From Octopus sinensis (Eukaryota), in contig NC_042999.1 of NCBI RefSeq assembly GCF_006345805.1, positions 160,084,001 to 160,148,000 on the forward strand: a stretch of DNA of 64,000 nucleotides, written 5' to 3'. Made by a program: the position numbers and the translations under genes. The notes beneath the pieces were generated by a model. That model was not told the origin of the DNA, did no database searches, and saw only the letters and a list, made by a program, of their open reading frames with translations. How positions within the stretch are numbered: position 1 is the first letter of the stretch; each line of letters starts with the position of its first letter. Positions 42,855-64,000 of the stretch are shown here, piece after piece.

Positions 42855-43175
42855 GGTGTGTGGCTTAGTGGTTAGGGTATTTGGCTCTCAATCATAAGGT
42901 TTTGAGTTCGACTCCGAACAACGTGTTGTCCTTGAGCAAGACACTTTATTTCACGTTGCTCCTGTCCACTCAGCTGGCGAAAATGAGTAGTACCTGTATC
43001 TTAAAAGGGCCCACCTTGTTACACTCTGTGTCATGCTGAATCTTCCTGGGAGCTTCGTTAAGGGTACATGTGTCTGTGGAGTGGTCAGCCACTTACTTGT
43101 TAATTTCATGAGTAAGCTGTTCCATTGATCAGATTAACTGGAACCCTCATCATCCTAACTGATGGAGTGCCAGTT
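42855..43175 (+). mobile_element. tRNA-derived SINE family D
   Basis: A-box TGGCTTAGTGG, B-box GAGTTCGACTCC, CCTTGAGCAAGACACTT core; related copy at about 58405-58745. Confidence 0.7.
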
Positions 43176-43345
43176 ACTGCTAGGTGCAGGCGTGGCTATA
43201 TGGTAAGAAGTTTGTCTCCCAATCTCAAGGTCTTGGATTCAGTGTCTCCTACTATAGCTTTGAGCCAATGAAACCCTTGTGAGTGGATTTGGTAAATGGA
43301 AACTGAAAGGAGCCCATCACATATATATATATATATGTGTGTGTG

Positions 43346-47400: not shown

Positions 47401-47520
47401 GTAAGTTAACCTTTGAGTAAATCAGTTGATATCAAAATATGTATATTTGCTAATAAACTTATTGTTCAAGTTTTGAATTTGCTATTTCCACTTGCATAAC
47501 TTGCAAATGGAACACTCTGT

Positions 47521-47826
47521 GGAGGCACATGGCCTAGTGGTTAGAGCAGCGGACTCATGGTCGAGGGATCGTGAGTTCGAATCTCAGATCGGGTGATGTG
47601 TGTGTTTATGAGCGAAAACACCTAAGCTCCACGCGGCTCTGGCATAAGGTAATGGCGAACTTCTGCTGACTCTTTCGCCACAACTTTCTCTCACTCTTTC
47701 CTCCTGCATCTTGCAGCTTACCTGCGACGGACCGGCGTCCCGTCCAGGTGGGGAACCTATATGCCAAGAAACTAAGAAACTAGCCCTTATGAGCCAGGCA
47801 TGGCTCAAGAAGGAACAAACAAAAAA
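47521..47826 (+). mobile_element. Full-length tRNA-derived SINE with Meta/V-SINE-like domain
   Basis: A-box TGGCCTAGTGG, B-box GAGTTCGAATCT, CTGCGACGGACCGGCGTCCCGTCCAGG domain, A-rich tail, 16-bp TSD AAATGGAACACTCTGT. Confidence 0.85.
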
Positions 47827-47984
47827 AAATGGAACACTCTGTAATTAGAAGTGAATGTCAGTGTTTATGAGATTAATCAGTAATTTATTCATCTTCAAAG
47901 GATCTCTTATTACCAAATGTCTGTTCTCTGAAGAAAACACTTTTTCTCTCATAAACACTACAGCTCCACCGCCTCCTCATCATT

Positions 47985-62436: not shown

Positions 62437-62709
62437 GCCATTTCTTTGTGGATTGGTTCTGAAAAGCCAAAAGACAAAAATGAAAAGAAGCCACAAAAAA
62501 GTGATTTAAATTCTTCCAAGCTAGAAAAAGATGAAAAAGAACCTGAAACAGAGAAACAAGAGAAAGAAGTAGAGAAAGAAGACAATGAAGTGAGTCAGTC
62601 AAAGAAAGAGATTTCTTGTGAGAAGAAAGAAGAAGATCCACTGGAAAAATTGTCTAAAGATGTAAATGATATTGAAGATGATGACAGTTTGAAAAACGAC
62701 CCAGATGAG
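62437..62709 (+). CDS. GPAA1: GPAA1 coding exon 9 (gene continues beyond window)
   Basis: AISLWIGSEKPKDKNEKK...KNDPDE |gtaagt; AISLW aligns with recalled vertebrate ALELW after the minor intron; 273 nt, phase 0 to 0. Confidence 0.85.
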
Positions 62710-62897
62710 GTAAGTAGCAGGAACCATTTTGGGTAATAACTGTAATAGCTGGTTTAGCACAGTGACTTGATATCAGAGATCAAATCCACTCTACATCGGT
62801 TGGAGTGGAAGCAAAAGACTTCCGTTGCAAGTCTTTTTGCATTATTGGTGCGGTTGTGTGGTAAGAAGCTTGCTTCCCAACCATATGTGTGTGTCTT

Positions 62898-63626
62898 GCC
62901 TGGAATCGAACTCGGGCATATGGCGTAGTGGTTAAGAGCGCGGGCTACAAACCCCAAGATTCCGAGTTCGATTCCAGGCAGTGACTTGAATAATAATAAT
63001 AATAATAATAATAATAGCAATATCGAAAAATAACTTACGAATGAGAACCCAGGTTCGAAATTTCCTCAAGACGCCTGATGAAGGCTGGAGGGTATATCAG
63101 CCGAAACGTGTTAACAAACGAGATGAGGACATATATCCGTCAAATGTAAATAATGTAAATAATATCTCATCTCCTAAATAGAGAACTGTATTTTATCAGG
63201 AGTCCTAACCATCCTGTATATTGACAGGAAACCTGGACGTTATCAAAGAAGCTTGAGAGGCGGTTGGATGGAACCTACACTCGCCTCCTTATGAGAGCTC
63301 AAAATCTCTCGTGGAAGCGTCATCCAACCAAAATGCAAATATATGGGAAACTACCACCTGTGTCATCTCTTGTGAAAGGTAGGAGAGTCCAGTTTGCTGG
63401 ACATTGTTGTAGAGCTGAAAACAAGGCAATTTCTACTCTTCTCCTCTGGAAGCCATCTACTCGTGATACCAGAGGGCACACACTCTCCTACCCTGATGTA
63501 ATCTCCAGGGATACAGGCATCCAGCAACAGAACCTCCGTTATGCCATGATGGACCGTGAAGTCTGGCGTAGCATGGTAAATTCCATTGTCTCGATCACGG
63601 TCGAACAATGATGATGATGATGATGA
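62898..63626 (+). mobile_element. Composite retrocopy: inverted tag + tRNA-like head + hammerhead-like motif + RTE 3' end
   Basis: Flanked by TGTGTGTCTT (62888-62897 / 63627-63636). A-box TGGCGTAGTGG, B-box GAGTTCGATTCC, RTE C-terminal ORF 63264-63611, (GAT)n tail. Confidence 0.7.
63070..63112 (+). ncRNA. Degenerate minimal type I hammerhead ribozyme motif (Penelope-like-element type)
   Basis: GACGC-CTGATGA-A-GGCTG(loop)CAGCC-GAAAC-GTGTT. The core and stems I and II are present but the cleavage triplet appears to be missing. Confidence 0.6.
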
Positions 63627-64000
63627 TGTGTGTCTTATGTCTGTGTTTGTCCTGCTTGATAACAGGTGTTGGTGTGTTTATGTCTCCCATAACTTAGCGG
63701 TTCAGTAGAAGAGACTAATAGAATAAGTACCAGGCTTATAAAAAAACAAGTACTGAGGTCAATTCATTCAACTAAAAATTCTTCAAAGTGGTGCCCCAGC
63801 ATGGCCGCAGTCTAATCACTGAAACAGATAAAAGATAAAAGATATAAAGATAGTATTTACATACAAATATATAATTTGGTTGATTTGAATATAAAAACTG
63901 AAACCAAATGTACATAGGGCCACATCTCAGAAGGTTGGCTCTTCTCTTTGGAGCCAAAAAATACTTTAGCCTCTCACAATTACTGACACTCAAAGTTAAC

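What the first reader, a model, noticed from the sequence alone, without database searches (positions are those of the whole stretch)
62898..63626. Chimeric retrocopy: tRNA-headed, hammerhead-bearing RNA fused to an RTE 3' end under one TSD
Seen, in order: a perfect 18-nt inverted copy (62898-62915) of the element's own T-arm (62962-62979); a tRNA-like Pol III head; (TAA)n; a hammerhead-like motif; then an RTE ORF C-terminus with a (GAT)n tail. The whole unit is bracketed by TGTGTGTCTT and sits inside a split family A SINE. Inference: a single RTE-driven event with template switching onto a SINE/retrozyme-like RNA, pointing to a family of Pol III-transcribed, ribozyme-carrying non-autonomous retroelements analogous to schistosome Sm-alpha or Penelope-linked motifs.
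Basis: partly seen in the sequence, partly recalled or inferred. Interest (0 to 1): 0.75.

Follow-up and report, generated by a model that had tools for sequence, protein, structure and literature searches.

The report
RTE-fused copy of a cephalopod SINE-like repeat
An apparently complete copy of a small tRNA-headed repeat is joined head-to-tail to the cut-off 3' end of an RTE-type LINE inside one target-site duplication, most likely because the reverse transcriptase switched templates; its "hammerhead" is only a conserved sequence box, not a foldable ribozyme.

Summary
The sequence features are real. There is a 10-nt direct repeat at both ends, a perfect 19-nt inverted copy of the T-arm, a tRNA-like A/B-box head and (AAT)9. 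There is also a CTGATGA...GAAAC box and a 5'-truncated RTE-type ORF end with a (GAT)n tail. All of this sits in an old SINE.

The chimera reading is supported. The 5' part (62914 to about 63203) belongs to an independent repeat family. I recovered seven other loci, mostly from read sets that share this window's SINE. None of them is followed by RTE sequence. The window copy starts at the family's own 5' terminus (GGGCATATGGCG, shared with L006), and family homology runs to within a few bases of where RTE homology starts.

The ribozyme reading is not supported. Rfam gives no hammerhead hit in any copy. No copy has helix I or a U-H cleavage site, and the helix-II-like stem shows no covariation above control.

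New here: other family loci carry an inverted, 5'-truncated copy or tandem units at their 5' side. That is the insertion style described for Penelope-like elements.

Verdict: a new example of a known kind, a LINE-mediated chimeric retrocopy. It may be a snapshot of a SINE acquiring a LINE tail. Interest is moderate.

The parts
62847..62887 (+). 5' part of the host SINE ('family A') copy: the head, then a jump over about 130 bp of missing internal sequence into the TG-rich region.
   Evidence: BLAST and MAFFT against 10 other copies in the window. 62852-62887 matches 12812-12777, and 63623-63842 matches 12637-12417. That leaves 139 nt in between in the intact copy.
62888..62897 (.). Left copy of the target-site duplication, TGTGTGTCTT.
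   Evidence: Exact 10-mer, repeated at 63627-63636.
62897..62915 (+). Inverted copy of the T-arm (62962-62980). It overlaps the duplication by 1 nt and the element's first GG by 2 nt.
   Evidence: the repeat finder I1: 19 nt, 100% complementary, 46 nt between the arms.
62914..62988 (+). tRNA-like head of the non-autonomous element. 5' terminus GGGCATATGGCG; A box 62921-62931; B box 62964-62975.
   Evidence: The 12-nt terminus is shared with L006 867-878. The T-arm region is shared with L011. The A+B pattern gives 0 hits in 300 shuffles. 33 nt are 85% identical to the head of the SINE at 47520. It is not a foldable tRNA.
62989..63015 (+). (AAT)9 linker between head and core.
   Evidence: Direct reading. 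L009 and L010 also have (TAA)n directly 5' of the core. L006 has an AT-rich stretch and L012 a (GAT)n-like stretch.
63032..63167 (+). Conserved core domain of the family. It contains the hammerhead-like box CTGATGA-A-GGCTGG..TCAGCC-GAAAC at 63075-63107.
   Evidence: The ORF through the core found 21 related short ORFs. A DNA profile from 9 copies scores the window at E=4e-38, and this is the only copy in the window.
63168..63203 (+). 3' tail of the family element. It includes the only T4 run (63191-63194) after the head.
   Evidence: Local alignments with the inverted copy in L006, L012 and L010 reach 63197-63203.
63204..63611 (+). 5'-truncated RTE-type LINE 3' end. The C-terminal 127 codons are intact (63228-63608) and the stop TGA is at 63609-63611. 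The first ~20 nt carry indels.
   Evidence: 210 protein relatives. 88% gapless nucleotide identity to L001 from 63217. A relative's ORF has Exo_endo_phos and RVT_1 domains.
63608..63628 (+). (ATG)7 = (GAT)n tail of the RTE-type element.
   Evidence: Direct reading. The same tail is present in L001 and L002.
63627..63636 (.). Right copy of the target-site duplication, TGTGTGTCTT.
63637..63845 (+). 3' part of the host SINE ('family A') copy.
   Evidence: 72-80% identity to 10 other copies.

Best explanation
One retrotransposition event made a chimeric retrocopy.

Proposed sequence of steps:
1. An RTE-type LINE reverse transcriptase nicked a TG-rich site inside an old SINE.
2. It primed on the (GAU)n tail of its own RNA and copied about 420 nt.
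3. It then switched template onto the 3' end of an unrelated small RNA. That RNA is a tRNA-promoter-headed, roughly 290-nt non-autonomous element with an (AAU)n linker and a conserved core.
4. It copied that RNA to its 5' end.
5. The new strand then made one more short jump. Either it folded back on itself, or the other target strand primed internally. This added a 17-19 nt inverted copy of the T-arm.
6. The product was joined to the upstream target, leaving an 8-10 nt target-site duplication.

Shown: the anatomy, the independence of the two parts, and the shared termini.
Inferred: the order of steps, which enzyme acted, and that the template was a Pol III transcript.

The CTGATGA...GAAAC box is a conserved sequence block of the family's core, not a working hammerhead.
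For: 1. A single direct repeat TGTGTGTCTT brackets both parts, and no internal duplication flanks either part.
2. The 3' part is a 5'-truncated RTE-type ORF end with its own (GAT)n tail. The closest relatives continue upstream of the break.
3. The 5' part belongs to a separate family. 21 related ORFs were found. Seven other DNA loci match the core at nhmmer E of 1e-36 to 1e-11, and none is followed by RTE sequence. Two of them (L006, L011) also carry pieces of the window's SINE A, so they come from related genomes.
4. The window copy begins with GGGCATATGGCG, the same terminus as L006. This is 7 nt before the A box, where a tRNA-type Pol III transcript would start.
5. Family homology reaches 63197-63203. 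RTE homology starts at about 63204-63207, so the joint is tight.
6. The middle region is not RTE-derived (shuffle test).
7. The duplication, the inverted-repeat arms, (AAT)9 and (GAT)n are all perfect, and the RTE frame is open for 127 codons. This points to one young event.
8. RTE families are reported as recently active in Octopus vulgaris (PMC13282606). LINE-driven chimeras by template switching are documented for L1/U6 (PMC4476161).
Against: - The duplication lies in TG-rich low-complexity SINE sequence, where a short repeat is less improbable.
- The empty site could not be examined.
- Only one window plus a few kb of related contigs were searchable by DNA. A rare subfamily that already carries this RTE tail cannot be excluded.
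- About 130 bp of the host SINE is missing 14 nt from the insertion point and is unexplained.
- The T4 run is 9 nt before the joint rather than at it, and it is not conserved in other copies. Pol III termination at the joint is therefore not shown.
- RTE clade membership was not tested by phylogeny.
Confidence: 0.68

Rival explanations
1. This is an ordinary member of an existing composite SINE subfamily: tRNA head, core, and a long RTE-derived 3' tail. It inserted here by normal RTE-mediated retroposition. The chimera would then have formed earlier, at another locus.
For: - The architecture is the textbook one for a SINE: head, body, LINE-derived tail.
- This genome holds abundant (GAT)n-tailed SINEs, with at least 9 copies of family G in the window. 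An RTE-type machinery therefore does mobilise SINEs here.
- Internal T4 runs are tolerated in mollusc SINEs (PMC4758252).
Against: - None of 7 other family loci has RTE sequence after the element.
- The 420-nt 'tail' still has an intact 127-codon frame and is 88% identical to an autonomous copy.
- No second copy exists in the 64-kb window.
- The 19-nt inverted piece sits outside the family's 5' terminus.
Confidence: 0.17
2. There were two independent insertions. An RTE fragment inserted into the SINE. Later the SINE-like element landed exactly at the RTE fragment's 5' boundary, or the order was the reverse.
For: - Nested insertions are very common in this repeat-rich window.
- L002 shows RTE copies inserting next to each other's tails.
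Against: - The inner element has no duplication of its own and no tail or microsatellite at its 3' end.
- The only direct repeat pairs the outer ends.
- An independent hit within a few bases of the earlier junction is very improbable.
Confidence: 0.07
3. The core is a working hammerhead ribozyme that acts alone or as a dimer. The family would then be a retrozyme or Sm-alpha-type self-cleaving element.
For: - CUGANGA and GAAAC are kept in several diverged copies, with the free position N7 varying among U, A and C.
- A stem lies between them, 80% paired over 9 copies.
- L005 holds 129-nt tandem units.
- Other loci show an inverted 5'-truncated copy, as described for Penelope-like elements, which carry hammerheads (PMC8557442).
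Against: - No Rfam hammerhead model matches any copy, at E<=10 in the window and in L006 and L008-L012, or at E<=1 in L005.
- The base after the hairpin that follows GAAA is A or C, not U, so no U-H cleavage site is there. Helix I is under 3 bp in the window and absent in the other copies.
- RNAalifold predicts no consensus pairs.
- Covariation in the stem is not above shuffles (150-250 of 500).
- Several copies have core mutations (CCGAUGA, CUAAUGA, AAAAC).
- The N7 variation is also a third-codon position of the ORFs through which the copies were found.
Confidence: 0.06

Closest known systems
U6/L1-type chimeric retrocopies: LINE reverse transcriptase switches template from LINE RNA to another cellular RNA (e.g. 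PMC4476161; bioRxiv 10.1101/2025.02.02.635956)
   Same: - The 3' part is a 5'-truncated LINE with its tail.
- The 5' part is an apparently complete copy of a small Pol III-type RNA in the same orientation.
- One duplication surrounds both parts.
   Different: - The LINE here is RTE-type with a (GAT)n tail, not L1 with poly(A).
- The partner is itself a mobile SINE-like element, not a snRNA.
- There is an extra 19-nt inverted piece at the 5' end.
- The host is a cephalopod-type genome.
tRNA-derived SINEs with RTE-derived tails (the SINE/tRNA-RTE class; named from my own knowledge, not tested here)
   Same: A Pol III A/B-box head, an unrelated body, and an RTE 3' end with a simple-repeat tail. 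This is the structure thought to arise by exactly such a fusion.
   Different: - The RTE part is 420 nt of still-open coding sequence.
- No other copy with this junction was found.
- It looks like a one-off or nascent fusion rather than an amplified family.
Schistosome Sm-alpha and animal (non-LTR) retrozymes / Penelope-like element pLTRs
   Same: - A small non-autonomous element with a Pol III-type head and a CUGAUGA...GAAAC box.
- Family members occur as tandem units (L005).
- Family members occur with an inverted 5'-truncated copy at the 5' side (L005, L006, L011), next to microsatellites. These traits are listed for PLE insertions in PMC8557442.
   Different: - No canonical hammerhead can be folded in any copy, and Rfam hammerhead models do not match.
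- No similarity to a PLE pLTR was tested.
- The window copy itself was evidently moved by an RTE-type tail.
SINE superfamilies defined by a conserved central domain (CORE, V, Deu, Ceph, Nin-DC, Meta/MESC; PMC4824008, PMC4758252)
   Same: A roughly 135-nt core kept at 72-80% identity between copies whose heads, linkers and tails differ. It is also found in a more distant genome (L005).
   Different: I could not compare the core with the published domain consensus sequences, which these tools do not hold. Identity with Ceph, Deu or another domain is therefore open.

Membership tests
LINE-mediated chimeric retrocopy (U6/L1 type) | One target-site duplication flanks the whole two-part unit, with none around either part. 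| tested here: met
   TGTGTGTCTT at 62888-62897 and 63627-63636, and no inner direct repeats. Caveat: the context is TG-rich, and 1-2 nt are shared with the tail.
LINE-mediated chimeric retrocopy (U6/L1 type) | The 3' part is a 5'-truncated LINE ending in its normal tail. | tested here: met
   RTE-type ORF end plus (GAT)n. Relatives P0001-P0008, L001 and L002 extend upstream of the break.
LINE-mediated chimeric retrocopy (U6/L1 type) | The 5' part is a copy of a different RNA that exists independently and is not normally fused to the LINE. | tested here: met
   Seven other loci carry the family core without RTE sequence. The 5' terminus is shared with L006.
LINE-mediated chimeric retrocopy (U6/L1 type) | An empty site exists in a relative or haplotype and lacks both parts together. 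| not testable with these tools
   No eukaryotic genome collection can be searched by DNA. The metagenome and viral pattern scans found nothing.
Hammerhead ribozyme | Conserved core boxes CUGANGA and GAAA separated by helix II. | tested here: inconclusive
   The boxes are present in the window and in L005, L008, L009 and L012, and mutated in L006, L010 and L011. The stem is 80% paired, but its covariation is not above shuffles.
Hammerhead ribozyme | Helix III closed by A15.1-U16.1, followed by cleavage site H17, with helix I pairing the flanks. | tested here: not met
   An exhaustive scan of type I and type III geometries found no site with helix III >=2 bp and helix I >=3 bp in any of 6 loci. 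The single helix I of 3 bp in the window pairs with a site about 145 nt away in the tRNA head, which is not a plausible hammerhead geometry.
Hammerhead ribozyme | A match to the curated covariance models (Rfam Hammerhead_1, _II, _3, HH9, HH10). | tested here: not met
   No hit at E<=10 in the window region or in L006 and L008-L012, and none at E<=1 in L005.
tRNA-derived SINE | An internal Pol III promoter (A and B boxes at tRNA spacing) at the 5' end. | tested here: met
   TGGCGTAGTGG, then 32 nt, then GAGTTCGATTCC. The pattern gives 0 hits in 300 shuffles.
tRNA-derived SINE | A recognisable tRNA cloverleaf or an assignable parent tRNA. | tested here: not met
   ARAGORN at default and relaxed settings, and the Rfam tRNA model, find none on the + strand.
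tRNA-derived SINE | A 3' tail shared with a partner LINE in the family as a whole. | tested here: not met
   The tails of L006 and L008-L012 differ from one another, and none matches the RTE.
RTE-clade LINE | A single ORF with an AP-type endonuclease and a reverse transcriptase, an almost absent 3' UTR, and a simple-repeat tail. | tested here: met
   The L002 ORF has Exo_endo_phos and RVT_1. The window's stop codon lies inside the (GAT)n tail.
RTE-clade LINE | Phylogenetic placement of the RT within the RTE clade. | not tested
No reference RT set was at hand.
Penelope-like non-autonomous element / animal retrozyme | Complex insertions: partial tandems and an inverted 5'-truncated copy at the 5' end, plus microsatellite bias (PMC8557442). 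| tested here: inconclusive
   Seen in L005 (inverted plus tandem units), L006 and L011 (inverted 5'-truncated copy). The window copy has only a 19-nt inverted internal piece and an RTE tail.
Penelope-like non-autonomous element / animal retrozyme | Sequence relation to a PLE pLTR, or circular RNA products. | not testable with these tools
   No cephalopod PLE sequences or RNA reads were available.

The most novel reading that the evidence does not exclude
The 5' partner may represent a cephalopod family of Pol III-headed, non-autonomous elements that normally move in a Penelope-like manner. The evidence for that manner is inverted 5'-truncated copies, tandem units and microsatellite-adjacent insertion. 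The family would keep a degenerate hammerhead-derived core, making it a lophotrochozoan counterpart of schistosome Sm-alpha. This locus would then catch such an element being handed an RTE tail, that is, a switch of autonomous partner between two retroelement classes.
Probability: 0.2. Interest if true: 0.65.

Novelty: new member of a known kind. Interest (0 to 1): 0.4.

Why it matters
Fusion of a small Pol III RNA to a LINE 3' end by template switching is the accepted route by which SINEs are born and change LINE partners. Clean single-event examples outside mammals are few. This locus gives one for an RTE-type LINE. Both termini of the donor element look intact, the joint is tight, and an extra fold-back piece records the enzyme's behaviour at the RNA 5' end.

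The work also brings to light a conserved core domain shared by diverged repeat copies. The insertion architecture of those copies resembles that of Penelope-like elements. If confirmed on a full genome, that would be worth a proper family description.

Tried and rejected
1. Six-frame peptide searches of the middle and head regions with the word-index protein search found nothing. The exhaustive HMMER search with the single ORF then found the family, so the earlier negatives were false.
2. DNA pattern scans of JGI metagenomes (two) and viral contigs (one) found nothing.
3. Full-text searches for sequence strings of SINE A and of the core returned only unrelated primers. The supplements of the SINE-superfamily papers are not held.
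4. I tested whether the middle region is RTE-derived, from the 5' UTR or a rearranged ORF. This was rejected by BLAST and a shuffle test.
5. I considered the T4 run as the exact Pol III stop at the joint. I weakened this idea, because family homology runs 3-9 nt past it and the run is not conserved.
6. I tried to use (GAT)n-tailed family G copies to calibrate duplication length. No duplications were detectable in those old copies.
7. L003 and L004 (35 kb) turned out to come from an organism without SINE A and without the core.
8. Apparent covariation in the helix-II-like stem (U-A versus C-G in L005) did not survive the shuffle control.

Full report
**What is in the sequence.**

- TGTGTGTCTT occurs at 62888-62897 and again at 63627-63636.
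- Directly after the left copy lies TGCCTGGAATCGAACTCGG (62897-62915). It is the perfect reverse complement of 62962-62980 (19 nt, 46 nt apart).
- From 62914 the sequence has a tRNA-type A box (TGGCGTAGTGG, 62921-62931) and B box (GAGTTCGATTCC, 62964-62975). This combined pattern occurs twice in the window and never in 300 dinucleotide shuffles.
- The head is not a tRNA. ARAGORN and Rfam find none. With relaxed settings ARAGORN only builds an artefact on the opposite strand out of the inverted repeat.
- Then come (AAT)9 (62989-63015), about 190 nt that are unique within the window, and a reading frame ending in TGA inside an (ATG)7/(GAT)n run (63608-63628).

**The host.**

The flanks belong to the window's commonest SINE, 'family A', which has about 11 copies. 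With the insert and one repeat copy removed, the right flank continues the SINE in register. The left flank has the SINE head and then jumps over about 130 bp that all other copies possess. It resumes 14 nt before the insertion point. I take this as a separate deletion, but it is unexplained. The duplication lies in the SINE's TG-rich region, and its first 1-2 bases cannot be told apart from the tail. It is therefore an 8-10 nt duplication of reduced statistical weight. Its left end coincides with an independent landmark, the start of the inverted-repeat arm.

**The 3' part.**

The 127 codons at 63228-63608 found 210 relatives at E<=1e-5.
- The closest (P0001, 89%) and many others continue upstream through ...KIWSSNLSRDFKL.IF.A.VEPILLYGSETW. 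The window copy is therefore 5'-truncated.
- At the DNA level L001 matches without gaps at 88% from 63217 to the tail. With small indels, the homology can be followed back to about 63204-63207.
- A relative on L002 has AP-endonuclease and RVT_1 domains and the same (GAT)n tail.
- That tail is followed at once by a second truncated copy, so this LINE inserts next to its own tail repeat.
- I call it RTE-type on architecture: a single EN+RT ORF, the stop codon in the tail repeat, and a microsatellite tail. The clade was not tested by phylogeny.
- RTE families are reported as recently active in Octopus vulgaris (PMC13282606).

**The 5' part is a member of its own family.**

BLAST within the window finds no second copy. 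Two six-frame peptide searches with the word-index tool were negative. The exhaustive HMMER search with the ORF through 63017-63181 then returned 21 short ORFs at 45-74% identity. Most of them start at the same methionine.

Their contigs gave seven further DNA loci.
- L005 comes from an ENA long-read assembly.
- L006/L007 (one locus seen in two runs) and L008-L012 come from Logan assemblies of runs SRR11869384-91.
- L006 and L011 also contain pieces of SINE A, so these runs come from relatives of the window's organism.

A DNA profile built from nine copies scores the window at E=4e-38 over 63032-63167. It finds no other copy in the window, nor in L001-L004.

The copies share a core of about 135 nt at 72-80% identity. 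Their flanks differ.
- L009 and L010 have (TAA)n directly 5' of the core, as the window does.
- L006 has an AT-rich stretch there, and L012 a (GAT)n-like stretch.
- L011 has the T-arm, the linker and the core in the window's order.
- L006 begins with GGGCATATGGCG, the same 12 nt as window 62914-62925, but lacks the A/B-box body.

At the 3' side, homology with L006 (inverted copy), L012 and L010 reaches 63197-63203. The window thus holds the family element from its own 5' terminus to about its 3' terminus. The joint to RTE sequence is tight, within about 0-6 nt. None of the other loci has RTE sequence after the element. A shuffle test shows the middle region is not itself RTE-derived.

**Mechanism.**

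These facts fit the pattern known from L1/U6 chimeras (PMC4476161): target-primed reverse transcription that starts on the LINE's own RNA and switches to the 3' end of another RNA.

Shown:
- one duplication around both parts;
- a truncated LINE with its tail;
- a donor element that looks complete at both ends and exists independently;
- a tight joint.

Inferred:
- the RTE enzyme did it;
- the donor was a Pol III transcript. The 5' end lies 7 nt before the A box, where such a transcript would start. The only T4 run (63191-63194) is 9 nt before the joint and is not conserved, so termination there is not established;
- the 19-nt inverted T-arm copy arose when the nascent cDNA, having reached the RNA 5' end, primed on itself. 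The arms share GG/CC at 62914-62915. Alternatively the other target strand primed internally, as in twin priming.

Three further details agree with one recent event of this kind. The first ~20 nt of the RTE part carry indels. The duplication, both repeat arms and both microsatellites are perfect. The RTE frame is open.

**The hammerhead question.**

The box at 63075-63107 reads CUGAUGA-A-GGCUGG-loop-UCAGCC-GAAAC.
- As a bare pattern (CUGANGA, a stem of 4 bp or more, GAAA) it occurs three times in the window against 0.26 expected. On its own it is weak evidence.
- Rfam finds no hammerhead in the 1-kb region at E<=10, none in L005 at E<=1, and none in L006 or L008-L012 at E<=10.
- An exhaustive scan for type I and type III geometries finds no U-H site with a usable helix III and helix I in the window or in any other copy. 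The hairpin after GAAA is followed by A or C, not U.
- RNAalifold predicts no consensus pair on the nine-copy alignment.
- The helix-II-like stem is 80% paired, but its covariation is matched by 150-250 of 500 shuffles.

The box is conserved, and its free position varies (U, A, C). However, that position is also a third-codon position in the ORFs through which the copies were found, and several copies carry core mutations. I conclude that the box is a conserved block of the family's core and not a demonstrable ribozyme. The core does contain three similar modules (GAAUGAG-stem-CGAAAU, CUGAUGA-stem-GAAAC, GAUGAG-stem-AAAU), so descent from a hammerhead-like unit cannot be ruled out.

**An unexpected family trait.**
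- In L006 the forward copy is preceded, head to head, by an inverted copy of the element's 3' part (about 75-95 nt), truncated at its 5' side. A possible 8-nt duplication, GATAAATA, flanks the pair.
- In L011 an inverted, nearly complete core precedes a forward copy that starts in the T-arm.
- In L005 an inverted unit precedes two and a half 129-nt tandem units.

Every locus where a 5' side could be seen shows an inverted piece. This trait, the tandem units, the variable 30-40 nt tails and the microsatellite neighbours are what Craig et al. describe for Penelope-like element insertions (PMC8557442). Such elements usually carry hammerheads in their pLTRs, and Penelope families are recently active in octopus (PMC13282606). 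This is a lead from four loci, not a test. I could not compare the core with any pLTR, or with the published SINE central domains (Ceph, Deu, Nin-DC, V, Meta). Their sequences are not held here.

**Verdict.**
- The chimera interpretation is the best supported, at confidence about 0.68.
- Its main rival is that the fusion pre-existed as a rare RTE-tailed subfamily (about 0.17).
- Independent nested insertions are unlikely (about 0.07), and so is a working ribozyme (about 0.06).
- This is a new example of a known kind of event, in an RTE/cephalopod setting. Its further interest depends on whether the donor family proves to be Penelope-mobilised.

Noticed in passing
window 4820, 13547, 42275, 43772, 46704, 50149, 58304, 59905 (tail positions): A second abundant SINE, 'family G', ends in ...GGAAGGGCATCCAGCTGTAGAAAC...GGACGTTAAAC(GAT)n. 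It has internal ~55-nt tandem units and at least 9 copies. It has the same tail repeat as the RTE-type LINE, so that machinery probably moves it. From memory its GGAAGGGCATCC block resembles the V-SINE domain; this was not tested.
   Followed up: partly
window 47520-47830: A tRNA-headed SINE with a poly(A) tail and a 13-nt duplication, TGGAACACTCTGT. Its head is 85% identical over 33 nt to the head studied here.
   Followed up: partly
window 42855-43180: A further tRNA-headed SINE with a perfect A/B-box pattern. It is unrelated in body to the element studied here.
   Followed up: no
window 62847-62897 with 63627-63845: The host SINE A copy lacks about 130 bp of internal sequence found in the other 10 copies. 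The deletion ends 14 nt from the insertion point, between CCAACCA and TATGTG.
   Followed up: partly
L002 19-2908: An RTE 3' end with a (GAT)n tail is followed at once by a second, 5'-truncated RTE ORF (EN+RT). The called start of that ORF lies in the (ATG)n tail. This is tandem insertion into the element's own tail repeat.
   Followed up: partly
L005 3064-3490: 129-nt tandem units of the core are preceded by an inverted unit. The resulting 122-nt hairpin scores as mir-4504-like, below Rfam's threshold, on both strands.
   Followed up: partly
L006 769-1165 and L011 570-917: Head-to-head pairs: an inverted 5'-truncated copy sits next to a forward copy of the family element. L006 has a possible 8-nt duplication, GATAAATA. 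This is the insertion style described for Penelope-like elements.
   Followed up: partly
window 62440-62710: An exon-like open frame, rich in Lys and Glu, ends in GAG|GTAAGT. It lies about 190 nt upstream of the insertion on the same strand, so the chimera probably sits in an intron.
   Followed up: no
window 63039-63146: The core contains three similar hammerhead-core-like modules in a row: GAATGAG-AACC..GGTT-CGAAAT, CTGATGA-A-GGCTGG..TCAGCC-GAAAC, and GATGAG-GAC..GTC-AAAT. This hints at an old internal triplication.
   Followed up: partly
window 62760-62770 and 62979-62989: An identical 11-mer, CAGTGACTTGA, lies upstream of the host SINE and at the 3' edge of the tRNA-like head. It is probably chance, given the size of the region searched.
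   Followed up: no
L008 86-260: Upstream of a 5'-truncated family copy, the ORF reads ...KWKFLRLDQIHNFWLNRLTEVQEIL.... From memory this resembles the start of a LINE RT domain, so this may be another fusion or a nested insertion.
   Followed up: no
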